Of a stretch of 64,000 nt of DNA, positions 2,620 through 23,638 are shown in pieces. The position numbers and the translations under genes are program-made. The DNA is taken from assembly GCA_047495785.1 (NCBI GenBank), contig JBLDXI010000054.1, forward strand, positions 3,968,001 to 4,032,000. The letters are read 5' to 3'. The DNA comes from Lepidodermella squamata. Its lineage: Eukaryota; Animalia; Gastrotricha. The notes under the pieces are model-generated. The model saw nothing but the letters and a program-made list of their open reading frames with translations. It had not been told where the DNA came from and searched no databases. Numbering within the stretch: the stretch's first letter is position 1; the number at the start of each line of letters is the position of its first letter.

Positions 2620-3053
2620 GTATTTTATGTCGCTTTTTTTATGCGAAGTACCTAATAACACCGAACCAGGAAAAATAGCGCAGCTGATCACTGATCACCA
2701 ATATAAAGTTCATAATTTCTACTTTCGGTTGTTTTCTCGCAGTTCTCAATAAAAAAAGCCGTTAATATTGCTTCTGATAGCCATCACAGATCAGATCAAA
2801 TCCAGTAGGAATATGAAGATATTAGCACACCTGAGCTACTTCAGCTCGACCTCTCCCCCTAATTTTTCCGACAGTGTTACGAGAAGTCAGCAGCTACAAA
2901 TAGTATAATAGGTATATTTATTTTTAGTATTCATCATCTTCCTTAAGCGGAGCTTTTATACTCCAATCGCAAGTTGTAAAATATAAGTCTGGTATGCACA
3001 GGGAAGCCATTTGCTTAGCAACCGGTAGACCTAATTTTTGCGTGGCAGAGAGG
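2620..3053. repeat. Direct repeat copy A (non-coding)
   Basis: Near-identical to 14980-15563, e.g. ACTTTCGGTTGTTTTCTCGCAGTTCTCAATAAAAAAAGCC and GGTATGCACAGGGAAGCCATTTGCTTAGCAACCGGTAGACC. Both copies end at GGCAGAGAGG. Confidence 0.95.
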
Positions 3054-3462
3054 TTTAGTTTGGAAACGGGAGTCAGCTGGCGAATCACTTGTTTGATGCT
3101 AAAAAAAGAACGCATCCAACGAATCGACTCCACAGATCTCACATACTTAAGGATGAGGAAACAACACAGAAGCTCAGTTTCGAATAAAAATATCCAACCC
3201 TTGGAGAAGCAATGCTCTCTATTACTCAAAGCTCCGATTTCAAGGTGTTGCTCGGCGTCTTTATATTGTTAATTAATTGCAATGCTTGAACGGCGTTTGA
3301 AAATGCAACATCAACTTATTGATTTATTTTGCAATGCTATGTGCAAAGAAATAGCGAACGAAATCGAACTGTCTTGTTCAGCAAGCGAGGCTGACTCTCG
3401 ATTTTTCTATATCATAGTCTACGGTCTATGGTGTGGCACGGTTCATCGTTTGTGATTTGCTG

Positions 3463-4827
3463 CTATTTAAGCGCATCACTGAGAGCGCTCAACAGAACAA
3501 GTTTAGCCAACTGCAAAAAAGATGCATCTTAAATCTTTTCGCAAAATTTGACATTCTTAATTATGCGTATAGCCAGCGAAAACCCAGCGGTGTTGGCTCA
3601 TACAAATGCGCATATAAACTTACCATGCTGCTGACGTCATCCGAATCGCCGGCTGCAGCGCGTCCGCGTCCAATGGCGTTCAGGGCGGTGATCGATGTCG
3701 ATGATTGACGCTTCTCACCCAGTTTCGGCAGATGCTCCTTGTAGTATCGCCACAACACTTCAGGGGCTTTACATTTCAAATCAACCTGATAACATTTCAG
3801 CAACAGTCAACCATAATGAATGTTTACAATAGACTCACAGCGCCTCCCGAACCAAGTCTGTAGACATTGGCGGATCCACCTGTCCAACGAACACGCACTG
3901 AGTCACGCGACGTATCCACACTGTCGTTGAATTTCGTTACAACTCCCGACTTGCCAGAACCACCGTCTTGATCACCGTACTTCCAATCCCTGCCTCGCGT
4001 AACCACGGCACCAGGAGTTATTCCCATCTGGCAAAACAACCCCAAAAAAGTTCTCAATATATATAAAACATAAGGAAGACATGAAGGGTACCTATATGGG
4101 CTTAAATCAGCCTGAAGCCGAATATAAACCCATATAACCTGAATGGCTTCCGTTTATGTGCGTTATCCGGGTCGTATCGTAACGTTTTCAGGGTTACTAA
4201 TATTCTAAGTTGTCCGACTAAGTTGTCCGACTTGGCTCGATTTTGCGATACGATCCGGATAAAAAACCCCTTGTATAAAAATCTAGCTGCATTTTACCGA
4301 ATTTTTGCGAAAGTGTAAAGCTCGCGGCTTTTGAAGTTCCGGGCTGGCACCTGGATAATCCACCCGCACAAAAGGATGCTCCAAGTCGTGTTTATTACCA
4401 TGGTAGCATTCCGAGCACAAATCATACGTCTGTTCCTTGCCGTTGCTGCAAGGTGCACAAATCCAACGGGCGCCCCAAATCGGCCGCGTACTACAGCCGT
4501 CACAGTGAATGCCAGATCCTGTGTCGCAGTAAAAGTCAATTGGTTTTGACATACCTATGGCAAATAATTCTACGATGTTATACCATGCTTGATCTGAGCC
4601 GGACCACTGTCCAGGATTAGCAGATCGAAGCCCCCGACTAAAGCTGAACTGCGATAGTTGGCTGTCTCGCCGCTCTGATCCCAGTGTACGATGGCAACTT
4701 TGCCATTATCTTTAAAGCAAAGCACCGTACCAATGTTTCCTTCTCCGCCATCCTGATTGCCCCATTTCCAGTCGTCGCTACGAACGACTCTCGCTCCAAC
4801 TTCAGGCCAGTGACGTTCTTCCGTCAT
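3463..4827 (-). CDS. Stand-alone Mind-bomb MZM protein 1 (Mib-herc2, ZZ zinc finger, Mib-herc2; no ankyrin or RING)
   Basis: Five exons: [25 protein letters not shown]; [27 protein letters not shown]; [18 protein letters not shown]; [15 protein letters not shown]; last exon [15 protein letters not shown]. Confidence 0.88.
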
Positions 4828-5409
4828 CTCGTACGTGGCTGTCCTTAGATTTTGTCTTCAAGCCGAAAATTACAAGTAGCTACACAGGGGCGAATGCAAT
4901 GCGGCACGACTGCAGTAGCGACCTTATCGCTGTTACGGCTGACCCCTGAGGTACTTGTCAACAATAGATAGGTAGCTGTTTTTTCCAAGGAATTTGCAAT
5001 ATCAATTGAAACACAGCTAAAAATGAAAACTTCCTTATCCGAGAAGAGATCAGTCAAGAAATATGTTAGTTTTACTGTAATACATTTAGAAACGCGTTAA
5101 CACCCCCTTTTTACAAGTCGCACCACGGCAGATTAGAAGCATTATTTTTTTGCGCGGCTGTGTAAATATCACTAAAAATAGCTATGAATTTCTGAAGGGC
5201 AAATGCCAAAGAGTATCTGCAGCAGAGTTGAATTTGTTAAGAGACATGCATACCTTCGCTTATCTCCGGAACATTTTCCAAGAGAAATTTATATTTTATC
5301 TATGACAGTTGATATCTCTCGTCCATCCACCCGCGCCTTCACGCATGCGCACTTGCCATTTTTTAATTGCTGTCATTTTGTTCCAGTAAAATCCGCACTA
5401 TTATCTAGT

Positions 5410-6723
5410 ATGGAGCAACACGCTGCTGCCGTTGTCGCAGTTGCTGGAGAAGCAGAAGCTGAAGCAGAACAACAAGAAGTTGAAGAAGAGGGTCATGATG
5501 ATGCCGATGATGATCCGGAATCACATCTACCGGAGGCTATGATGGCACCCGATGCTGATTTTTACGAAGTTCTCGGTGTTACGAAAGATGCATCAGATAG
5601 CGAGATTAAGAAGGCATACCGGCGCAAGGCCCTGGTTTGGCACCCTGATAAAAATGTGCGGTGTAAAGACCTGGCCGAGACGCAGTTCAAGCAAATCGCC
5701 GAAGCATACGAAGTGTTATCAGATCCTGAGAAACGGCGTCTCTATGATCGATACGGTCGTGATGGTCTAAGGGAATTCCAAGGGGGATATGGGGGCGCAA
5801 GTGACAACTTCGATTCTAGGTCCTCGTCGACACTGTACCAAATGTTCGAGACTTTGCTGCGAAAATCCTACGGTGGTTCGAATTTCCGACAAACGTTTTA
5901 CTACTTCAGAGTTGATCCTAATGAAGTTTTTCGTCGATTTTTTGGCGGATCCGATCCGAACAATTACGAAACGGACGACGATAAACGTAATAAAAGTAGC
6001 GGGGATTTCAGACACGGTGCCAACAAGCAGGGGCCTTATAGGCAACACAAGTCGCATAACTGGAGGAGTTCAGATACGCCGAACAATTTCTACCACAGCC
6101 ATGACTATGAAGAGGATCCACATCACTTACACGCAGCTGCCAATGATGGCTTGAACGACATCAAACAATCTAAAACAAGCAGTAGTTTCAATTACCCGCA
6201 AAGCCCGAAATTGCCTAGGGCAAAATACACCACGCCTGCATCTAGCATGGGAGCGAACAAGCAAAAACTACCACAAGCCAAAGATGGAAATTACCAAGAT
6301 TATGAAATAAACGACTTTGGAACTTATAGAAATGATGCAAATAATAGTAATCGTTATCCTTCTCATGCCTACGAGAGCAGGCGGGTTTCATATTACGACA
6401 GTACTCCAGAAGATACCAACCCTACTTCGCAATCCTCCCTTCCCCCCTACCCCACGCATCAGGGCCGCTTCGGCTACGAGTTTGACCGGTATGGAGGAGG
6501 CGCTAGAGTTCCACGTCACTTACCACCGGTAGCTGCAATCCGCTACCCATGTGCCGGCTGTCCAAATTGCAGGCAGTGGCGGAGAGAAGCGGACGGCATC
6601 TCAAATTTAGCAGGTATGAATAACCGTGAAAATTTGAATGCCGTTGAACAAATCAATTTCACTTTCCAGCCTCGCTCCGCTATGCCGATCGTTCTCAGCG
6701 ATATTAATGTTCCCATAATGTAA
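5410..6723 (+). CDS. DNAJB6/DNAJB2-like class B J-domain protein with acidic N-terminal extension and low-complexity C-terminus
   Basis: J domain [49 protein letters not shown], then [18 protein letters not shown] typical of the DNAJB6 group. A possible intron at 6614-6669 would move the stop to 6707. Confidence 0.88.
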
Positions 6724-6873
6724 CCATAGTGTAACTAACCTTGTGAAAGCTTTGCTATCTAGCCATACATACGCTATTGCTTGCCATCAAAGGCCCATGA
6801 TTGGTGACTGCCCATTATCTGTTTGATTTAATCTACGCAGTTAATGATCCTTGTAGGCTTATTCTTTAAGGCA

Positions 6874-8877
6874 ATGACTGATATTACGTCGACGTCGCAC
6901 TACACGAGGCAAGGCCAGCTTGGAGCTGGCTCATTTGGCACAGTCAGTAAAATTGTGCGTTCGACAGATCAATCCGTCTACGCGGAAAAAGTGATCAAGG
7001 TTAAGAGTTCGTCCATCTTCTCTCGTCAATCAGTTGCAGTTTCCTTAACAAAAGCTCAGCAAGAGGTTAATTGACCTTCAGCTGAAAAGATGCATTCATT
7101 ATTTCATGAATTGTGCTGTTTATATAGGTTAGCTTGCTGCACCAGTTGACACATCCGAACATCGTCCGAGTTTACAGTTCTTTCATCGGTAAGTTTCTTT
7201 TCGAACCGTAGACTTTCTTTAATCTAAGTCATTATATTTTGTTCTCTATAAGATGATATGGGAAATTTCGTCATAATAATGGAGTTTTGTGAGGAAGGCG
7301 ATATGAATGACATCATTGCCGAGCGCCGAACAGCCGAATCGCCGTTTCCTGAAAAACAAATCAGGCTCTGGCTGCATTGCCTTGCTCATGCTGTCCATTA
7401 TTTGCATGGCAGAAGTATTTTGCACCGAGATATAAAACCCAAGGTTTGAGAAGCTTCTTTTAGTTTTTGCAGTATTCCTCTTTTTATCTGCCAAATGCAT
7501 TTCTTGCGCGAATTTTTCTAATCACATTAAATTGAACTTTTAACTTTCGATCAGAAAACTAAAGTGTTGACTGTTGTTCACAGAACGTATTTCTTTCATT
7601 CGATCGAAATACTGCTAAACTTGGCGATTTCGGCATAGCAAAAGTATTGGATGAATGCAAGCCAGTGTGCAATACGGGAGAGGGCACTTGGGCATATTCG
7701 GCACCAGAAGTATTCAAATCAGATGGCTATAGTTTCAAGGTCGATGTTTGGAGCTTGGGCGTTCTGCTATATGAGTTGGTAACGTTTAAGTTGCCTTTCA
7801 GGGGTGGCAACCAGGCACTGCCCTTGCTAATCATGCACGAAAACTACCGTCCAATTGCCGATGGACTCTGTAGCCAGCCACTGTTGATTCTGATCGGGAG
7901 AATGCTGACTAAAGATGTAAACAAGCGTCCGACCATCCAGGAGGTGCTTGATGATCCTTTCTTAACCGTCGTGAAACAGTCACAAGAGAACAGCAGACCA
8001 GCAGCAGGTAGTGTAGTCGATGAGCGGCTGGGATTGCATTCTATTAAACGATCGCAGCACTTAACGCTCAATGAAAGACAAGTGGTGGCTGACATGATGC
8101 GGGAACAGGGCCTTTCATTTTCCGCATTGCTTGCATTGAGCGCCTCTGAAATAAGCGGAAAATTTCCACAAGATCTTGCATCAACTGTTGTTGCAATGGT
8201 GGAAAAGGAGAGGGCGGCCAGCGGTACGAGAAGTCAGCAGAGCTATCCAAGACTTACCCAGTCAAGTTCATCCAAACGAGTTAGTAATATTTACCTCCTT
8301 CGCTACTTCTCCAAGTGTAATCATGATTTTGTTTATTTCTTCGAAGCGTCGTGAGAACATGGAGGCGGTCAAGCAATCACTGGCTTTGCCGCCGAGCTAT
8401 CGCGAGATTGTGCTCGACGTAATGGATGATAAAGATTTGGGCTTGCAGGATTTGAGTCAATTGACCGAGGCGACTATTTCAGAACTGTTCCCGTCACCTC
8501 AGCTTAACAGTGCTGTGAGAAAGTTTGCTAGGGAGCTGCAGCAAAGAAATCCATCGAACGGCGAGCGGAGAAGCGAACCCAAAACTGAATCCAAGGTAGA
8601 AGCCGGTATTCCAAGCGTTAGCAAGAGCCATTGCAATTCGAAAGACGTCGCGATAGCGGCAACTGATGCTAAACGAGGATCAAGAGGATCAAGAGGATCC
8701 GTGGAGCCAGAGCCTGATGGAATTACTAACGACAACAGGCACTCTCGCGACAATGACGCCGACGATGGCGCTGATGTGAAGAGAAAACTCTTTGGCGGTG
8801 ACCGTGGAGCGTCTGCGCCATCTATTCGTATCAGGCCGATCAGTCGAACAGCTGAGACTACAGTGAACCAATTTTGA
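6874..8877 (+). CDS. NEK-family Ser/Thr kinase with two C-terminal SAM-like repeats
   Basis: Five exons. Motifs LGAGSFG, VYAEK, EVSLLHQLTHPNIV, IIMEFCEEGD, HRDIKPKNVFL, KLGDFGIAK, GTWAYSAPE, YSFKVDVWSLG. Confidence 0.9.
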
Positions 8878-9012
8878 CTAAAACTTTGCAAAATAGCTAA
8901 CGCTGATTTTTATTTGATATGCAGCCAATCAATTAACATTCCGTTGATACACTATATAATTGCTGGATGCTTATACTGATGACTCGATGTTAAAATTTTT
9001 AGATAATATTAA

Positions 9013-10168
9013 ATGCCGGCTAAAGAAACTCACTGGCCCGAGACCGGTTCGCGGGTAGTGCGCGGCCCATCCTGGAAATGGCAAGATCAAGATGGCGGTG
9101 AAGGTGGCGTCGGAACCATCTTATATTTTGAGAATAATGGCAAAACGGCTTACGTCTGCTGGGACATTTCCGGCGTGACAGGTAGTAATAATCATTTCGA
9201 CCACGCAATATTGTAATTATTTTTGATGATTTGATAGCTGATTATCGCTGCGGACCCGGTAACTACGATTTGCTGATTTTGGATAGCGCGCCTGCAGGTG
9301 TAAAGCATGACGACGTGCTATGTGACGGTTGCGGTCTTGACAACATCGTCGGCATCCGCTGGAAATGCAAAACCTGTTATGACCGGAATCCTGCTTCAAA
9401 CGGCTACGACTTGTGCTCTGAATGCTACCATGGTAATAGGCACGATTTGGATCATACTTTTTTTCGGATTGAACGTGAAGAAAGTGAACCGTAAGATATT
9501 TCCATTCTCAAGCCAAACTTATCTTCATCATGTGGATTGCTTCTACCATCAGATGCCAGCTGGAACCTCGATTAAAATATTACCGCAAACAAGCTAAAGG
9601 GATATTTCCAGGTTCTATTGTTTGTCGAGGACGTCACTGGAAATACGGAGATCAGGATGGGGGCAAAGGAAGAGCTGGTATTGTTCGCAAGTTGGTCGAC
9701 TGGTCCAAGTCTGAAAAAGGCTCTCGTAACGGTGTCATAGTCAAGTGGGCCAATGACATTTCCAACTGCTATCGCCTTGGCGCTGAATTCAGCTCGGATT
9801 TGGTCTCACCAAAGCCCGAAATTGGCATGCTCTATTACAATTCTCATTTGCCGAAATGCGGTAATGCTTTGCATACTTTGCGTACTATTAACACCAGCTG
9901 AAAAGTACTTTCGTACCTATCTCTTCTTCGTCATGCATCATAGGAGCCGCTCGAAATGGCGAGAATAGTAGCGATAGCTCGGTGGATGCTAGAACTGACC
10001 TTTTGGCTGAACTGGTTTGTCTTCTTACATGATTTAATAGTAGTCTAGAAGCTATAGATGGAAAACTTCTGCATGCTATTCTGATAGCATTACTCATTCA
10101 TTCCGCCTATATTTATATTTCAGTTTGCGAAGTTGCTAGTCGGAATGGCTCGCAATGAATCGGGCTAA
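9013..10168 (+). CDS. Stand-alone Mind-bomb MZM protein 2
   Basis: Five exons: [24 protein letters not shown]; [35 protein letters not shown]; [22 protein letters not shown]; [10 protein letters not shown]; last exon [14 protein letters not shown]. Confidence 0.88.
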
Positions 10169-10638
10169 GAAAACTCAAATACATACTGTGGAGTACCTTC
10201 CCACGCAGCATTTCCCATAGCTAAAATGACGTTGGCCGGACTATCATCATCCATCGTTGCCTAAAACAAATTTTTAATGAAGCAATGCAGTACTCGTGCG
10301 TCAAAAAGTGTTATTTCTGTTTCAACTGCTTCGTTTTTCGTTCCAATTGGGCAATTTATGATTTCTCACTAGGAATCAATCGGTGTTCTCGGCTCTCTTT
10401 AACTTCATCTATATTCTATTTTCCGTTTTTCTCTTTCAGCTATCTCTTTCAGCGAACGGCTATGGAATTTGTCGAAAAAAATGAAAATCTGAAAACTCTT
10501 GTTAATGGGTAAATAACCGGCAAAGAAATCAGGTTTATTGGGATTTCTCAATGAACTGGTAGAGAAGGACCACGAGGTATACAATACTTCTCCAGAGAAC
10601 AGCAGACAAGTCACTAGCATTTTACGTACACAGAGTTA

Positions 10639-10934: not shown

Positions 10935-11499
10935 GAACGCGCGGAAATGTGCCAATTGCGATGGTCCGCACTCTGCCAACTACGGAGGCTGCAAATCCGT
11001 TCAAGCCGCAGTCAAACGAGATGAACAGCGCCTGCAAGCGAAAATCGAGAAAGCACAGGGCAGAAGGGAATCAAACGCTCCGCCAGGCACGTCAAAGGAT
11101 AAGCCACAGCCGGTTTTCAAGCCAGCACCTCAGCCATCGGGCCTTGCTTGGCAAGGTCAACTCAAAAGCATCATCGAAAACGACAACCTCATCGAAAAGC
11201 TGGCCTGCAAACTGGCGCCAATCGTGGCCGAAAAAGCACGGAACGAGCTGCTCGGCAATTTGCATTCCACTCTCCAGACGCTATCCGACTCTGTAGCCCG
11301 CCTAGAAGCCAGGCTAAAGAATCTAGAGGACTCCATCACTGGAAAGAAATTGACGAAGACCACCTCATCGTCGCAGTTAGCTGTAGGTAACAGCGACTAC
11401 TGGTATGAACCACCCATTGCCGGGACGTCGTCTCGCGGAAACAATCGCGGTGCCAGAGGCAGCAACACTGGTCCGAAAACCTCTCGTAAACTATCATGA
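10935..11499 (+). CDS. LINE ORF1 (Gag-like) C-terminal fragment
   Basis: KCANCDGPHSANYGGC knuckle and a coiled coil. Its stop overlaps the ORF2 start (ATGA). Confidence 0.75.
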
Positions 11500-14396
11500 C
11501 CTGGGTTGGACAGTGGAATTCTGGACACGGCAAAAAAGTAACTTTAACACTTGCTGAAATTATTTTGATGATTGAAACGCTAATGCTTGATATTTTGTTG
11601 ATCAACGAAACATGGCTTGATGATGACGATATTTTTGAAATCCCAGGATTCACCATTTTCAGTCTAGAAAGGAAAGCGAAAGCTGCCAATAACGTCACGT
11701 ATGGTGGCGTCGCAATAGCTGTAAGAAACTCCATCCGAGTCACAGAGACTTATGAATATTATACAGATCACAGTGAGTGGCTAGCCGTGGTTGTGACCGA
11801 TAAAAATGGCAAAAAACTCACCGTAGCCACGGGCTACAGCTCTCCCAACTACCCCCTTGACTTGACTTTTTTGAACTTGTGTCTAGGTGGCTCAGCAGCA
11901 AATCCTAATCACCCGTGCATCTTCGCCGGCGACCTTAACTGTTGGCATCCGACTTTATCGGACCCTATTAGCAAAAATCCGGCTGGAACTGCACTCGCTG
12001 CATGGCTGGAGAATGAGGGTCACACCGTCATGAGCGACGGTACCCCCACGCACTTTTCCACATATGGCTACGGTCGTCAAATTGATATTTGGCTGGCTAA
12101 TCAGGCGGCTCTGCCTTTCCTTACAGGACCAGCCCTCGTCGAGGACAAGTACGGCAGTGACCATTGTGCTACCCGCCTGCAGGTCGACTTCAAAGCCAGT
12201 CCTGAGCAGGAAGATACTTCTGCGAGCGAGCCTCGACTCGATTTCAACAAAGCAAACTGGGACCGTTTTGCCGAAAGACTCGCATATTGGCTCGCCACGA
12301 TTGCCGACCCGGTGAAGCCGAAGCCGGGCGACCCGGTGGAAAGCATTGAAACTTATGCCGACAGCATCGTCGACGCTATCCAACGAGCGGCGAACGAAAC
12401 GATCCCTAAATGTAAGTACTCAAAACTGTCGAGCTGGCGTTTAACCAAGGAAATAGCCATCCTACTTGATCAACGAAATAAATTGCAAAGAATTTTTGAC
12501 AAAACAAAATCTTCTGAAGCCAAAACTCGAATCAACAAACTCAACAAAGAAATCAAATTTTTGATCGCCCAGGAAAAACTCAGGGCTTGCGAACAATTTT
12601 TGAAAAAACTTGCAAAGCTTTTTAAGCAGCACCAAACTAGAGAAGCGTGGCAGGCCGTCAATGGGCGGTTGAAAGGCCGCCGCCGAAACCGCAAAATCGC
12701 CGTTCTCACCAACCTAAATGGTGTAGGTGTCACAGAGGATGCGGCCAAATGCGAGCTATTGGCGCAAACTTTTGGTAAGGTTTTAGAGGGCCCGCCTATG
12801 ACATCGAAGTCGCCGGAAGATCAGCTCTTCTGGAACGCAACCAGCGAAGAGATGGCGAGCAGCGATAAGATGCGCCCTCTCCGTACGATCCCTAACAGGG
12901 TCCAAGTCCGTGTTCCGAAGTGGGCCGTGCGGCAAATGATGAAAGCACTGAAATGGAAAGCGCCCGGGCACGACAACGTCTCCAACGTCCTCATAAAGCA
13001 CGGCGGTAAAAAGTTGGCGAAGCACTTGCGGTATCTCTACCAACTCAGCCTCAACAGTGGCTTTGTACCGAGAAACTGGAAGGTAGCGATCATCGTTCCA
13101 ATTTTAAAATCAGGTAAAGATTCACGCCTTCCCGATTCTTACCGACCGGTGTCTTTGTTACCGGCCATTGCCAAAGGTTTGGAAGTTGTTGTTGCCAAAT
13201 ATTTATACCATTTTTTAGCCATGCACAATTTATTACCACGCCACCAATTTGGCTTTCAGCCGTTACACTCCACAACCGATCCCCTTTTTCTATTTATTAG
13301 CGATGTAGGTTTATCAATTGCAAAACGGAAAAAGCTTGTTGCCATGTTGCTCGATTTCAAAGCGGCCTTCGACTGTATCTGGCACGACGGCCTTCGCAGA
13401 AAACTGGAGCAGTCGGGTCTTCCGTCGCCTATTACCAGGTGGGTTTCAGATTTCCTTCGGGACAGGAGTTTTAAAGTCAGAGTCGGAAACGAACTTTCTC
13501 AGTCCAGAAATATTTTTTGTGGCGTGCCTCAAGGGTCGCCTTTGTCGCCATTGCTATTTATTTTTTACACCAGCGACATGCAGCCCAAAAGCTGTCTCCC
13601 TGACGATGGTGCTCGGCGTGTTGGTAAGGGCACCTTCGCCGACGACGTCATTAACTGGGCCTTCGGGGACCAATACCACGTCTGCGCTCATCGCCTTCAG
13701 AGGCGGCTCTGCGCCATCGAAAGCTGGTGCAACCGCTGGCGCCTCAAACTCAATCCTGCCAAGTGCGAGGCGATCGTCTTCGGCCACTACGGCAACACAC
13801 CACCCACTGTCAACCTACGATTGTACGGCCAAGCCATCCCGCAGGTTACCCAAGTCCGGTACCTAGGTCTGCACCTAACGCCGCTCCTTTCATGGTCGAC
13901 GCATCTCGACGTCATCTCGTCAAAGATCCGACAGACCGTCGGATCTCTGTATGGCCTTTGCCGAGCTAAAAATTTGCCAAAAGGAGTTTGTGTTTTATTT
14001 TACCAGACACTCATAGAACCGGTGTTGCTGTATGGTGCCCCGGCCTGGTCCTGCATGAGCCCTTCAGCCCTGAGTCGCCTTGTGGACCTTCAAGCCTATG
14101 CCCTTAGAGCCCTACTGAACCTCCCCCAAGAAACGCACCCTATCGATGTGATCGCCTTCGCCGGCGTCACTGGTATTGACCTGCGGTTTGAGACCGCTAC
14201 CCAACGCTACGGCGAGCGAACTCTTGCCGCAGAACTCGATATTGCTAAATATATCGAATACATCGCTCATTTAACGGCTACAGACAAAATCGCGACAGAA
14301 CTGGAAAAACGCTGCCCAGCGTGGCATATCAGACAGCTGCCAAAGCCCGACTACCGCCTCCGATTCGACACCAGAGATTGGCTGATCATTGAATAA
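11496..14396 (+). CDS. LINE ORF2: APE endonuclease plus reverse transcriptase (966 aa)
   Basis: Endonuclease motifs NETWL, GGVAI, GDLN, SDH. RT motifs KAPGHD, YRPVSLL, QFGF, LDFKAAFD, GVPQGSPLSPLLF, FADD, YLG. Confidence 0.96.
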   Translation: MTWVGQWNSGHGKKVTLTLAEIILMIETLMLDILLINETWLDDDDIFEIPGFTIFSLERKAKAANNVTYGGVAIAVRNSIRVTETYEYYTDHSEWLAVVVTDKNGKKLTVATGYSSPNYPLDLTFLNLCLGGSAANPNHPCIFAGDLNCWHPTLSDPISKNPAGTALAAWLENEGHTVMSDGTPTHFSTYGYGRQIDIWLANQAALPFLTGPALVEDKYGSDHCATRLQVDFKASPEQEDTSASEPRLDFNKANWDRFAERLAYWLATIADPVKPKPGDPVESIETYADSIVDAIQRAANETIPKCKYSKLSSWRLTKEIAILLDQRNKLQRIFDKTKSSEAKTRINKLNKEIKFLIAQEKLRACEQFLKKLAKLFKQHQTREAWQAVNGRLKGRRRNRKIAVLTNLNGVGVTEDAAKCELLAQTFGKVLEGPPMTSKSPEDQLFWNATSEEMASSDKMRPLRTIPNRVQVRVPKWAVRQMMKALKWKAPGHDNVSNVLIKHGGKKLAKHLRYLYQLSLNSGFVPRNWKVAIIVPILKSGKDSRLPDSYRPVSLLPAIAKGLEVVVAKYLYHFLAMHNLLPRHQFGFQPLHSTTDPLFLFISDVGLSIAKRKKLVAMLLDFKAAFDCIWHDGLRRKLEQSGLPSPITRWVSDFLRDRSFKVRVGNELSQSRNIFCGVPQGSPLSPLLFIFYTSDMQPKSCLPDDGARRVGKGTFADDVINWAFGDQYHVCAHRLQRRLCAIESWCNRWRLKLNPAKCEAIVFGHYGNTPPTVNLRLYGQAIPQVTQVRYLGLHLTPLLSWSTHLDVISSKIRQTVGSLYGLCRAKNLPKGVCVLFYQTLIEPVLLYGAPAWSCMSPSALSRLVDLQAYALRALLNLPQETHPIDVIAFAGVTGIDLRFETATQRYGERTLAAELDIAKYIEYIAHLTATDKIATELEKRCPAWHIRQLPKPDYRLRFDTRDWLIIE

Positions 14397-14979: not shown

Positions 14980-15563
14980 TATTCTCTATCGCATTTTGTA
15001 ATCGAAGTAATAATACCGAACCAGGAAAACTAGCGCAGCTGATCACCAATACAAAGTTCATACATTCAACCGTAATACCGCACCGGTCGTAATACATTAT
15101 TTATGAAGAATCCTATTGTCCTGCAAACTAGATCGATTTCGGTAACTATTGATAGATATCGATTTTGCTTCCCCGGTTTTCAAATATCGATCAAATCATC
15201 AAGTATTCACCCCCTCATCAGGTAACAGAAACTTTCGGTTGTTTTCTCGCAGTTCTCAATAAAAAAAGCCGTTAATATTGCTTCTGATAGCCATCACAGA
15301 TCAGATCAGATCGGTAGGAATATGAAGATATATTCGCACACCTATAAGCTACTTCAGCTCGACCTCTCTTAATTTTTCCGACAGTGTTACCAGAAGTTAG
15401 CTGCTACAAAACGTATATTAGGTATATTTTGTAGTATTCATCATCTTCCTAAAGCGGAGCTTATACTCCAATAGCAAAGCAAGTTATAAAATATAAGTCT
15501 GGTATGCACAGGGAAGCCATTTGCTTAGCAACCGGTAGACCTAATTTTTGCGTGGCAGAGAGG
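14980..15563. repeat. Direct repeat copy B (upstream of SDR paralogue 3)
   Basis: Matches 2620-3053 and carries an extra ~165 bp (about 15063-15230). Confidence 0.95.
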
Positions 15564-20373: not shown

Positions 20374-23300
20374 ATGGGTACATGTAAGCATGGTGACTAC
20401 TCAGTGTTAATTGTTATTCATATTGTAGTAATTATTTACTCGTTATCAGCCACGCCCAGGTTCTCGTATTTTGGCTGTTGTAGATTACGCAGCTGCTGAA
20501 AAAATGGTTCACAGTGGTCTAGAGCAGTTAGTCGAAGAGTGTCGCAAACGAGGCTTCGATGCCGTCAAGCTTTGCCGCGAATTACAACAGCTCGATGACG
20601 ACTACGTCAGCAAGCAATTCGATTATGATTTCGTCGAACGGGTCTGCGAGGATAATTCCGACTTGAGACTTTCAGATAGGATTGATGCTTTCTGCAGCCA
20701 CTGGGGAAGCAGCAGTTGTAGTAACGAATCTATTTTCTGGGTAATTCAAGCTGCGGAGAACGTTGACAGAGAATTTGCACGTTTCATAGCTAATAAGCTT
20801 CGGAATCAACTAGAAAATCCGGCATCGCCTCTGCAAGATGAAGACGCTAAGGAGGAAATGTTCGAATACATCGAAAAATACACGCCTTTATCCGAAGTTG
20901 TAAGTCCTGTTAAGATAGATAATACAGCAGGTGATACAATTTGTAATAAAAAGGTCACTCTATTGGCGAGCCGACTTGCATCTGGTCCCTCGGGACATGC
21001 GACAAATAAAATATTCCGATGCAACATCCCCTTGCCTTTGCGCAATCATCACGATCGTAAGGAAGTCGACGAAACCATTAAAGGAGCCATCTATCTCCTC
21101 GGCAATGCTTCCAGCCCTGCAACTGTTGTCATTTCAGGCGAAGGAGGTATCGGCAAAACTAGTGCAATTAGCAATTTTGTTTCCAGACCTAGCAGTGATG
21201 AAATTTTCAAGGCTTTGAAAATGACTGCTATCGTTTGGCTGGATGTTTTCGATTTCAAGCGGGAAGATAATTACGACGAGATCGAATTTTTGCAGCGCTT
21301 TGCTGACATAATAGGAGCAAAATATAACCCTGCTAATACGCGCGATCGGCAGGGCTATTTCTCGTCGATTCGAATGGCTCTTGTGAATCGGGCCAAGGCT
21401 ACTGGAAACTTGGCGTTGATAGTTCTTGATAATCTCTACAAACCCGAAATTCTCTGGACCGTGCGAAAAATCAGCAACCAAACTAGGACCTTGGCTATCA
21501 CTAGAGACCCGCTGTCTCTAATAGAACACGATTTGACAAACAATATCATTGGAAACTTGAACATCTCTCCTATTAGTTTGGATGACGCTTGTGCTATGAT
21601 AGGGAAATATCTGTCACCTGAGCTCATTGATCGAGATGGTAAGCTGGAAACGTTGGGAAATTTCTGCAGGGGATTACCGATAATGGCGTCGCTTTTTGCA
21701 GCAATTTTCAGATCGCGAAAGAAAGTTGAACATCACAGCGTATTTGTCGACCTCGTCCAACGACTGAATCAATCACATTCGCTTTCAAGACTTCCGTTCA
21801 CTGAGCAGGAGATGCGATTCAATGATATGCAGCAATTACTTGCATTCAGCTTGGAAATTGAGCGAAAAGCCGAAGTTTATTACCGATTCCTGCTCTTCCA
21901 ACCTGGCTCAACCGTAAAGAGCAGTGAAATGGAAGTGTTATGGGCGACTTCTAACGCGCAGGAAGCTGAGAAAATGTGCGAAGACTTTTGCTTCAAGGGC
22001 CTATTGCGAAAGGTTGCAGATGGTTCCTACACAGTTCATGATCTGTTGTTCGAAGCAGCCTTGAGGCAAGCTCAATTAGGCGAAGACGCCGATAGTTCGA
22101 GAGAAGCTCTCCTCAATCAAACTTTATTCGAATTTGAGGATAAAAAATTCGAAGATAAAACCTTTGAATGTAATCTCTTGAAAACGTGCCTCGATCGGCG
22201 GCTATACCGGTTAATGGAAATTAGCTCGAAATACATTTCGCAAGATGCCTGTGAACGCTTTGTGTCGGATTCTCCCATTCTGCACAAACTTTTCGCCTCT
22301 GCTGAACGATCGGCTATATGGGGCCGCGAGCCAGCCATCTTTTGCTCTATTGTCGGTAAGATGAGTAACGAAGCCATTTCAACCTTGCCAGATTTGGATA
22401 ATCTCCGAGATCACGATGGAAATTACCCTTTGCACTATACAGCTTCAAGAAACGACCTGGAGATGACCAAGAAGCTGCTATCAATCAGCGGCCTGTCGGT
22501 GAATAAAGCTGCGAACGACGGGCAAACTCCATTGCATCTTGCCGTCCGATGGAATAACTTGGTTCTGTTGGAAACGTTGTTGGGAACACCTGGAATTGAT
22601 GTTAACGCTAGGGACAGGCTGGGAGCTACGCCCTTATTTGTCGCCTGCCATTCCGGAAAACCTGATGTGGTTAGAGCCCTGCTGAATTTATGCGATCGAA
22701 TCGATGTAGATTCAGCCGATGAATTCGGGGACACCCCATTGCTCTGTGCCTGCCGGTCGAAGAACGACAGGGCTGTTGAATTGCTGTTGGAATCAAAAAG
22801 GGTTGACATGAACAAGCAGAATGTCTACGGCGGATCTCCACTGCATTATGCATCTCTCGTGGGCGCTGCTCATGCAGTTCGCCTCATTCTACAACAACCG
22901 AACTGTAATGCTTGCCCAGAAGATGAAGATGGCAAATATCCGATTCATCACGCGATGAGGTCAGGATTCACCGAAATTGCTATAATGCTGCGGCGGAATG
23001 GTGGGGATGAATGTCGGGATGGTTGGAATGACCTTCACGCGGCGTGCAGAGCTTCGGAAATTGACAAAGTTCGCAATATTATGGCCGAAAATCCGCATTA
23101 CTGCGCGGCCAAAGACGGGAAAGGACTGCTACCGTTGCATGTCGCAGCTTTCGAGGGTGAAATTCGCATTGTTGAACTCTTGATGCCATATTGTGCAAAG
23201 GAAAACCTGGTTAATCAACGTGATAACAATGGCTGGTTGCCGCTACATTGGGCAGCTTACAAGGGAAGCTTTGAGATCGCCGAGCTTTTGCTAGCCCATG

Positions 23301-23638
23301 CAGGACCCGAGGAAATATCTGCGGCTGATAACTGCGGCAAAACAGTTCTCCATTGGGCTATGAAATCGCGAAATTCAGACATAGTTAGTAAACTGTGCGC
23401 ACTTGGGGTCAACGTCAATGCGGTTGACAAATACGGCAAAAGCGCGCTGCATTGGGCAGCTAGATCAGGGATCGTACCGTCGATCAAAGCGATTATCGCC
23501 ACCGGGCGGGTTGCAGACCTTCGGCAAAAAGATAATTTCGGGAAAACGCCGCTGCAATACGCCCATGACATGGGCTATTTGGAAGCAGTGAACGAGCTGC
23601 TGCGGCCGGAGAGACTCGGCGACGATAGCATGTGGTGA
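20374..23638 (+). CDS. APAF1/CED-4-type NB-ARC protein with ~12 ankyrin repeats and putative N-terminal death-fold domain
   Basis: Walker A GEGGIGKT, Walker B LIVLDN, ITRD, GLPI, VHDL motifs; 12 TPLH-type ankyrin repeats. Probable micro-exon 20374-20383 spliced in frame to 20484. Confidence 0.9.

What the first reader, a model, noticed from the sequence alone, without database searches (positions are those of the whole stretch)
3463..10168. Two intact stand-alone Mind-bomb MZM genes without ankyrin or RING domains
Seen: both encode Mib-herc2/ZZ/Mib-herc2 with intact Zn ligands, then stop after a short acidic linker and a tiny last exon with a similar hydrophobic helix (SM|LAKLVLL vs EL|FAKLLVG, same phase-0 intron). 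A shared ending in diverged copies argues for a maintained family rather than debris. Known: MZM is the substrate-recognition module of the MIB E3 ligases (binds Notch-ligand tails), and RING-less MIB acts dominant-negatively. Inference: natural decoys or adaptors, with the tail helix recruiting a partner.
Basis: partly seen in the sequence, partly recalled or inferred. Interest (0 to 1): 0.7.

Follow-up and report, generated by a model that had tools for sequence, protein, structure and literature searches.

The report
Two expressed RING-less Mind bomb genes
A small invertebrate (almost certainly the gastrotrich Lepidodermella squamata) carries two expressed genes that encode only the target-binding part of the Notch-pathway ubiquitin ligase Mind bomb, and no complete Mind bomb gene was found in its genome.

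Summary
Two inverted paralogues, A (minus strand, 4827-3463) and B (plus strand, 9013-10168), are five-exon genes of 287 and 281 aa. All introns are GT-AG. Each gene encodes Mib_herc2 / ZZ / Mib_herc2 with all eight zinc ligands, then a 40-45 residue tail.

cDNA contigs confirm all four introns of B and a poly(A) tail 139 nt after its stop. For A they confirm intron 1 and a capped 5' end at 4883. Two A transcript contigs (1067 and 1052 nt) fit the model exactly and end about 15 nt past an AATAAA. So the transcripts do not run on to ankyrin or RING exons.

The two proteins keep 56 and 60 of the 62 columns that are strongly conserved across 104 MZM modules (dN 0.53, dS saturated).

The genome's only other Mib_herc2 domains belong to HERC2 and HECTD1. 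No Mib repeat (REP) domain was found, while Notch, one Delta-like ligand and Neuralized are present. A and B are sisters and group, with moderate support, next to canonical Mib1.

The "decoy of full-length MIB" reading is therefore weakened. I read them as stand-alone binding modules, acting as reader, adaptor or competitor. The tail-helix similarity is weak, and its role is untested.

This is a new variant of a known kind, of moderate interest.

The parts
4584..4883 (-). Gene A exon 1. The 5' UTR is 4883-4828 and the ATG is at 4827. It encodes the complete first Mib_herc2 domain (about 4797-4612).
   Evidence: Pfam MIB_HERC2, 59.7 bits. A SMART template-switch adaptor abuts 4883 in an X1 cDNA contig, marking the mRNA 5' end.
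4298..4518 (-). Gene A exon 2. It encodes the ZZ zinc finger (about 4510-4391) and the linker to the second Mib_herc2 domain.
   Evidence: Pfam ZZ, 35 bits. Intron 4519-4583 is removed in contigs of X1 and X3.
3839..4027 (-). Gene A exon 3, encoding the second Mib_herc2 domain.
   Evidence: Pfam MIB_HERC2, 58.2 bits. Splice sites are GT-AG. The splicing is inferred from transcript contig lengths only.
3624..3785 (-). Gene A exon 4. It holds the last strand (VDLKC), the [10 protein letters not shown] motif shared with MIB proteins, and a linker ending in GDSDDVSSM.
   Evidence: Aligns to MIB1 up to the HLPxLG motif. No Pfam hit of its own.
3308..3510 (-). Gene A exon 5. It has 15 codons ([15 protein letters not shown]) with the stop at 3465-3463, a 3' UTR, and an AATAAA at 3328-3323. 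The inferred 3' end is near 3308.
   Evidence: Phase-0 acceptor. The contig lengths of 1067 nt (X1) and 1052 nt (X3) equal UTRs plus the 864-nt CDS under this model. The X3 contig would end 15 nt past the AATAAA.
9013..9181 (+). Gene B exon 1. It starts at the ATG and encodes the first two thirds of the first Mib_herc2 domain.
   Evidence: Pfam MIB_HERC2, 47.5 bits. Intron 9182-9237 is removed in an X1 contig.
9238..9490 (+). Gene B exon 2. It encodes the end of the first Mib_herc2 domain and the ZZ finger (about 9303-9440).
   Evidence: Pfam ZZ, 32.3 bits. Intron 9491-9552 is removed in an X1 contig.
9553..9860 (+). Gene B exon 3. It encodes the linker, the second Mib_herc2 domain (about 9611-9802) and the [10 protein letters not shown] motif.
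   Evidence: Pfam MIB_HERC2, 63.3 bits. It aligns to residues 131-226 of human MIB1 (4xi6), E 1.5e-22. Intron 9861-9943 is removed in X1.
9944..10014 (+). Gene B exon 4, a Ser/Asp-rich linker ending in TDLLAEL.
   Evidence: Joints 9859/9943 and 10013/10123 appear in an X1 contig.
10124..10307 (+). Gene B exon 5. It has 14 codons ([14 protein letters not shown]) with the stop at 10166-10168, then a 139-nt 3' UTR and the poly(A) site at 10307. An AATGAA lies 26 nt upstream of that site.
   Evidence: An X3 contig covers 10124-10307 and is followed by 14 A's that are not in the genome. Hexamer position.

Best explanation
A and B are two real, transcribed, spliced and polyadenylated genes. They are old inverted paralogues lying 5 kb apart. 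Each encodes only the substrate-recognition module of Mind bomb (Mib_herc2-ZZ-Mib_herc2 up to the YYxxHLPxxG motif) plus a short tail with a hydrophobic helix.

They are most likely fast-evolving, truncated descendants of the animal's Mib1 gene. The REP, ankyrin and RING parts are gone, and no complete MIB gene was found elsewhere in the genome.

Inferred mechanism: the folded MZM still binds short linear motifs in cytoplasmic tails. The model is the N-box of Delta/Jagged, and the single Delta-like ligand here has an N-box-like DNLQNAQRK. Because A and B have no ligase domain, they would act as non-catalytic readers. They could mask or compete for such motifs (for example against Neuralized, which is present) or bridge the bound client to another protein through the tail.

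Shown: gene structure, expression, transcript ends, domain integrity, and the absence of detectable MIB. Inferred: what they bind, and what the tail does.
For: - Gene models and 46% identity between A and B.
- Pfam M-Z-M architecture, exon by exon.
- cDNA evidence: all four B introns, poly(A) at 10307, A intron 1, the A cap site at 4883, and A contigs of 1067 and 1052 nt. SMART adaptors and removed introns show that X1 and X3 are cDNA, while the DNA run X2 has no such joints.
- A's contig length ends 15 nt after an AATAAA.
- 56 of 62 (A) and 60 of 62 (B) strongly conserved MZM columns are kept, including all zinc ligands.
- dN 0.53 with dS saturated; the NG86 ratio of about 0.1 is only indicative.
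- The genome has six MIB_HERC2 hits: four here, one in HECTD1 and one in HERC2.
- REP was not found by PF18346 or by a REP protein query.
- Notch LNR, one DSL ligand and Neuralized are present.
- A and B are sisters (SH-aLRT 98-99) and sister to the canonical Mib1 clade (SH-aLRT 86). Their best BLAST hits are arthropod and vertebrate Mib1 at 47-49%.
- MZM alone carries most Mib1 function in ligand binding in flies.
Against: - No binding was tested. The one complex prediction gave no verdict.
- The published assembly that G000 appears to be has only 80.8% metazoan BUSCO completeness, so a full MIB gene could be missing from the assembly.
- The Mib1 affinity is moderate. The AU test does not reject placement with the MIB2-like group (p 0.23).
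- Branches are long (0.84 each, against 0.02-0.1 for Mib1), so the binding specificity may have changed.
- No orthologue above about 50% identity was found, so selection on the tail cannot be measured.
Confidence: 0.55

Rival explanations
1. Classic decoy. A full-length Mind bomb exists in the animal but is missing from this assembly. A and B compete with it for Notch-ligand tails, or protect it from degradation as reported for the human circRNA-encoded MIB1-223aa.
For: - RING-less Mib1 is dominant-negative in flies.
- MIB1-223aa stabilises MIB1 by competitive binding.
- The assembly's BUSCO completeness is 80.8%.
Against: - No MIB_HERC2 outside these genes, HERC2 and HECTD1 in 121 Mb and 151 contigs.
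- REP not found by two kinds of query.
- The only MIB/IAP-type RING hits are a lone RING ORF and a small ANK-RING gene.
Confidence: 0.12
2. Split E3. The MZM proteins recruit a separately encoded RING protein through the C-terminal helix, rebuilding a Mind bomb-like ligase from two polypeptides. One candidate is the small ankyrin plus C-terminal RING gene on contig C55.
For: - Mini-MIB1, which is MZM/REP tethered to ccRING3 by a flexible linker, is fully active. Only proximity of the binding and RING parts is therefore needed.
- An ANK plus C3HC4_3 RING gene exists.
- The post-MZM helix in a snail relative is modelled as a helix of only moderate confidence, 65-77 against over 95 for the MZM.
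Against: - No evidence of interaction.
- The best solved matches of the C55 RING are IAP and MYLIP, and no MIB1 chain is among the 60 listed.
- The tail is poorly conserved between A and B.
Confidence: 0.12
3. Relics. These are expressed but functionless remnants of a degraded mib1 gene, drifting towards loss.
For: - Very long branches compared with canonical Mib1.
- Loss of all catalytic parts.
- No close orthologues found.
Against: - Two copies have diverged to 46% identity yet keep open frames, canonical splice sites, all zinc ligands and 90-97% of the strongly conserved MZM columns.
- Both are transcribed, and A is found in two separate cDNA runs.
- dN is far below the saturated dS.
Confidence: 0.07
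4. Truncated models. The real genes are longer and reach ankyrin or RING exons, for example the ankyrin ORF at 20471-23635 downstream of B.
For: An ankyrin-rich ORF lies 10 kb downstream of B on the same strand.
Against: - Poly(A) is added at 10307 after B's last exon, and only one joint leaves exon 4.
- An intact LINE ORF lies in between.
- The ankyrin ORF starts with an NB-ARC-like NTPase region, so it is a separate STAND-type gene.
- The lengths of A's contigs leave no room for more exons.
Confidence: 0.03

Closest known systems
Mind bomb 1 (MIB1/Mib1) RING E3 ligase, N-terminal MZM module (structures 4xi6, 4xi7, 4xib)
   Same: - Same Mib_herc2-ZZ-Mib_herc2 order and the same zinc ligands.
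- Colinear alignment up to the YYxxHLPxxG motif, at 47-49% identity to arthropod and vertebrate Mib1.
- A and B group next to the Mib1 clade.
   Different: - No REP (SH3_15) repeats, no ankyrin repeats, no RING fingers, so no ligase activity of their own.
- They evolve far faster than canonical Mib1.
- They carry small inserts in the ZZ finger.
Engineered RING-deleted Mib1 (dominant-negative) and human MIB1-223aa (circMIB1-encoded N-terminal peptide)
   Same: A Mind bomb N-terminal binding region without catalytic domains. These act by competition.
   Different: Those are artificial constructs or a circRNA product, and they coexist with full-length MIB1. Here the truncated form is encoded by two ordinary germline genes, and no full-length MIB was found.
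Mollusc 'MIB2-like' predicted proteins with shuffled MZM modules
   Same: - Examples are Biomphalaria, Bulinus, Physella and Lymnaea proteins with two MZM modules, and short MZM-only models in Lottia, Pomacea, a chiton and the sponge Geodia.
- MZM is used as a movable module, and some models lack a RING.
- In the two-module snail proteins the first MZM is followed by an acidic stretch and a hydrophobic helix. One of these (Lymnaea, P0006) resembles A's tail (DDVxxMLAxLVL). It was the best of 108 regions, and 2 of 300 shuffles reached its score.
   Different: - Those are unverified annotation models, several of them partial.
- They group with the MIB2-like clade, not with A and B.
- None is a close relative (at most 50% identity).
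HERC2 and HECTD1
   Same: They share the Mib_herc2 domain, and both are present in this genome.
   Different: They are giant HECT ligases with a single Mib_herc2 domain and no M-Z-M unit. They are unrelated loci (contigs C1 and C45).

Membership tests
Mind bomb (MIB1/MIB2) RING E3 ubiquitin ligases | N-terminal MZM unit (Mib_herc2, ZZ, Mib_herc2) | tested here: met
   Pfam exon by exon. Alignment to 4xi6. 56 of 62 and 60 of 62 conserved columns kept.
Mind bomb (MIB1/MIB2) RING E3 ubiquitin ligases | Two Mib repeats (REP, Pfam SH3_15) after the MZM | tested here: not met
   - The transcripts end 37-45 residues after the MZM.
- The tails do not score above shuffles against a REP profile. In an anchored test the gain comes only from the linker, not the helix.
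- PF18346 is absent from the whole genome.
Mind bomb (MIB1/MIB2) RING E3 ubiquitin ligases | Central ankyrin repeat domain | tested here: not met
   No ankyrin in either gene. The poly(A) site lies directly after the last exon.
Mind bomb (MIB1/MIB2) RING E3 ubiquitin ligases | C-terminal RING finger(s) that carry the ligase activity | tested here: not met
   No RING in either gene. Transcript ends.
Mind bomb (MIB1/MIB2) RING E3 ubiquitin ligases | Binding of the N-box of DSL ligand tails by the MZM | tested here: inconclusive
   The Delta-like ligand tail has an N-box-like DNLQNAQRK. The complex prediction, run with B's exons as separate chains, gave no verdict.
ZZ-type zinc finger (PF00569) | Six Cys and two His ligands in the C-x2-C ... 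C-x2-C ... C-x2-C ... H-x3-H pattern | tested here: met
   All eight are present in A and B. Scores are above the Pfam cut-off.
HERC2 / HECTD1 HECT ligases | HECT domain with a single Mib_herc2 domain | tested here: not met
   A and B have two Mib_herc2 domains and no HECT. The genome's HERC2 and HECTD1 are on contigs C1 and C45.

The most novel reading that the evidence does not exclude
In this gastrotrich the canonical Mind bomb ligase has been lost altogether. What survives is its substrate-recognition module as two free-standing proteins that regulate Delta (or new clients) without ubiquitin-ligase activity of their own. They would act either by masking motifs or by handing clients to a ligase in trans.
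Probability: 0.2. Interest if true: 0.7.

Novelty: new variant of a known kind. Interest (0 to 1): 0.5.

Why it matters
[quoted passage not shown] An animal whose only Mind bomb relatives are two expressed MZM-only proteins would be an exception. It would also be a natural experiment on what the MZM module does by itself.

It bears on three things:
- how Notch ligands are activated when only Neuralized is available;
- whether MZM has ligase-independent roles;
- how substrate-recognition modules of E3 ligases can become independent genes.

The practical weight is limited. The organism is not a laboratory model, the assembly is about 81% BUSCO-complete, and no binding data exist.

Tried and rejected
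1. The tail as a vestige of the first REP helix. BLAST extends B's tail colinearly onto the start of REP1 in insect Mib1. However, a REP profile scores the tails no better than shuffles. In an anchored test the small gain (5 of 300 shuffles) comes from the linker, not the helix. Not supported.

2. Free local alignment of the two tails is not significant (p 0.18). Only the fixed register at the shared intron is marginally so.

3. Complex prediction of B (three exon chains) with the first 80 residues of the Delta-like tail gave no verdict, with a score of 0.00. This is no evidence either way, and the set-up with split chains is unlike the tool's calibration.

4. Search for a hidden full-length MIB:
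- PF06701, PF18346 and the REP region of a canonical MIB2-like protein.
- Its RING region gave two weak hits, a lone RING ORF and a small ANK-RING gene whose best solved matches are IAP and MYLIP.
- A whole canonical MIB (P0017) gave only generic ankyrin hits at 34% identity or less.
No MIB was found.

5. Close orthologues. The representative search with exon B3 gave 489 hits, none above 53% identity. The word search with a profile that included the window's exons did not return the window's own proteins among the best 120.

6. The AU test could not reject a placement of A and B with the MIB2-like group.

7. My first repeat scan missed the flanking direct repeats. A laxer scan found them.

8. 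The joined (spliced) proteins of A and B were never sent to any search, fold or complex tool. They were assembled only inside scripts, for local alignment, trees and statistics. Folding the full-length A or B and searching with them therefore remain undone.

Full report
**What is there.** The window is animal DNA with short introns. In 3463-10168 I rebuilt two genes from the sequence.
- Gene A is on the minus strand, with coding exons 4827-4584, 4518-4298, 4027-3839, 3785-3624 and 3510-3463 (287 aa).
- Gene B is on the plus strand, with exons 9013-9181, 9238-9490, 9553-9860, 9944-10014 and 10124-10168 (281 aa).
- All eight introns are GT-AG.
- The proteins are 46% identical (blastp 1e-86).
- The ZZ exons also appear as a 68-nt inverted repeat, 82% complementary.
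- Between the two genes lie a DnaJ gene and a protein-kinase gene, both on the plus strand.

**Domains.** Scanned exon by exon by reference, Pfam gives MIB_HERC2, ZZ and MIB_HERC2 in both genes, all above the curated cut-offs, and nothing in the tail exons. Exon 3 of B aligns to residues 131-226 of the solved human MIB1 MZM-REP fragment 4xi6 (E 1.5e-22). Both proteins run colinearly with MIB1 up to the YYxxHLPxxG motif that precedes the first Mib repeat. Of 62 alignment columns that are at least 80% conserved in 104 other MZM modules, A keeps 56 and B keeps 60, including all six Cys and two His of the ZZ finger.

**Do the transcripts really stop there?** Three public runs hold this DNA, and I laid them on 4450-10449.
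- X2 carries the stretch unspliced in one piece and is probably the source DNA.
- X1 and X3 are listed only as "RNA?". Their contigs lack the introns, carry SMART cDNA adaptors and in one case carry a poly(A) tail, so they are cDNA.

For B, all four predicted introns are removed in X1, at exactly the predicted borders. An X3 contig runs from 10124 to 10307 and then into 14 A's that are not in the genome. The mRNA therefore ends 139 nt after the stop, 26 nt past an AATGAA.

For A, intron 1 is removed in both X1 and X3. A template-switch adaptor marks the 5' end at 4883. The two contigs are 1067 and 1052 nt long. Under the model (56-nt 5' UTR, 864-nt CDS) the X3 contig ends at about 3308, 15 nt after the AATAAA at 3328-3323. 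Only one reads call of at most 6,000 letters was allowed, so exons 3-5 of A are supported by length and not by laid joints.

Downstream of B on the same strand lie an intact LINE ORF (11496-14393) and then an NB-ARC-like plus ankyrin ORF (20471-23635). That ORF is a separate STAND-type gene.

**Are they maintained?** dN between A and B is 0.53 and dS is saturated, so the NG86 ratio of about 0.1 is only indicative. Only the last intron is shared, and the other three introns of each gene lie at different places. The duplication is therefore old, and both copies have kept frame, splice sites, fold-defining residues and expression. The cDNA runs show no base differences from the window, so no polymorphism test was possible.

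**The rest of the genome.**
- G000 has 121.2 Mb in 151 contigs. This fits the published Lepidodermella squamata assembly of 122 Mbp in 157 contigs, with metazoan BUSCO completeness of 80.8%. It also fits an earlier agent's note that the organism is "probably a gastrotrich".
- PF06701 hits six places: four in these two genes, one in a gene with ANK, SUN, MIB_HERC2, BTHB and HECT domains (HECTD1), and one in a gene with RCC1 and MIB_HERC2 (HERC2).
- The Mib repeat family PF18346 has no hit, and neither does the REP region of a canonical MIB2-like protein.
- That protein's RING region finds only a lone RING ORF and a small ankyrin plus C-terminal RING gene on C55. The best solved matches of the C55 RING are IAP and MYLIP.
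- A whole canonical MIB finds only generic ankyrin repeats.
- Notch LNR repeats, one DSL ligand and Neuralized are present.

So a Notch pathway with Neuralized is there, but no complete Mind bomb was found. The assembly is not complete, so this is "not found", not "proven absent".

**Relatives.** A search of 1.84 billion representatives with exon 3 of B gave 489 hits, none more than 53% identical. The top scores come from snail "MIB2-like" proteins with two MZM modules. Short MZM-only or RING-less models exist in annotations of Lottia, Pomacea, a chiton, Lymnaea and the sponge Geodia. They are unverified, and several are partial.

By BLAST the nearest full MZMs to A and B are canonical Mib1 of arthropods and vertebrates, at 47-49%. 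In a 43-row tree, A and B are sisters (SH-aLRT 98) and sister to the canonical Mib1 clade (86). Their branches are 0.84 long, against 0.02-0.1 within Mib1. The AU test does not reject the alternative with the MIB2-like group (p 0.23). The likeliest history is that a mib1 gene was truncated after the MZM, sped up, and was duplicated within the gastrotrich lineage.

**The tail.**
- The shared motif at the start of the last exon is marginally above chance in the register fixed by the shared phase-0 intron (p about 0.004). It is not above chance as a free alignment.
- A's tail is uniformly hydrophobic and B's is amphipathic.
- A's tail resembles the acidic-plus-helix linker after the first MZM of a Lymnaea protein. 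This was the best of 108 regions, and 2 of 300 shuffles reached it.
- An AlphaFold model of that snail segment gives a confident MZM (pLDDT above 95) and a helix of moderate confidence, 65-77.
- The idea that the tail is a relic of the first REP helix found no statistical support.

**How it most likely works.** Shown: two stand-alone, expressed MZM proteins without any ligase domain. Known from the literature: MZM binds the N-box of JAG1 and Delta and carries most of Mib1's ligand recognition. RING-less Mib1 is dominant-negative. A minimal MZM/REP-RING3 fusion is fully active. A human circRNA-encoded N-terminal MIB1 peptide acts by competitive binding.

Inferred: A and B bind N-box-like motifs and act without catalysis, as maskers, competitors or adaptors. 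The single Delta-like ligand has a short tail with DNLQNAQRK, a PPPPPY motif and a PDZ-type end. A complex prediction with that tail gave no verdict. A classic decoy role needs a full-length MIB, which was not found. A split ligase with a RING partner in trans is possible but unsupported.

**Verdict.** This is a new variant of a known kind: a Mind bomb family member reduced to its recognition module, in an animal with no detectable complete Mind bomb. Interest is moderate.

**What was left out.** The joined spliced proteins were used only inside scripts. They were not sent to search, fold or complex tools.

Noticed in passing
window 2721-3053 and 15231-15563: Near-identical direct repeats (82-99% over three blocks, spacing 12,510 bp) bracket a 12.5 kb block. 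The block holds gene A, the DnaJ gene, the kinase gene, gene B and the LINE. This agrees with another first-stage note. My first, stricter scan missed them and one search found them.
   Followed up: partly
window 11496-14393 (+): An open 966-aa ORF with an endonuclease/exonuclease/phosphatase domain and a reverse transcriptase domain, that is, a non-LTR (LINE) retrotransposon 1.3 kb downstream of gene B. Observed only.
   Followed up: no
window 20471-23635 (+): A 1055-aa open frame with a weak NB-ARC-like NTPase region followed by many ankyrin repeats (Ank_2, 278 bits). It is a STAND-type gene, not part of gene B.
   Followed up: partly
window 8877-9013: Gene B's ATG lies only 136 bp after the stop of the upstream same-strand kinase gene. 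It is preceded by an acceptor-like tttttag ending 9 bases before the ATG. This is operon-like spacing that would fit the SL trans-splicing suggested in another note. The 5' end of B's mRNA was not resolved.
   Followed up: no
window 4883-5410: Gene A (cap site at 4883, minus strand) and the DnaJ gene (plus strand, probable ATG near 5410) are head to head about 0.5 kb apart. They may share a bidirectional promoter.
   Followed up: no
L017 (G000:C55:1266973-1270101), ORFs 412-954 and 1135-1656: A small gene with ankyrin repeats and a C-terminal C3HC4_3 RING (46.7 bits). The best solved matches of the RING are IAP and MYLIP, and no MIB1 chain is among the 60 listed. It is the only ankyrin-plus-RING candidate found when looking for the missing half of MIB.
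   Followed up: partly
L018:7390-7917 (-) (G000:C17): The single DSL ligand found has a 176-residue cytoplasmic tail with an N-box-like DNLQNAQRK, a PPPPPY (WW-binding type) motif and a C-terminal EDSV (PDZ-binding type).
   Followed up: partly
P0060 (Diadema setosum) and P0164 (Megalurothrips usitatus): MZM modules are fused to protein kinase domains in a sea urchin (MZM-REP-ANK-kinase) and are annotated as a tyrosine kinase in a thrips. This is further evidence that MZM is a shuffled module outside E3 ligases.
   Followed up: no
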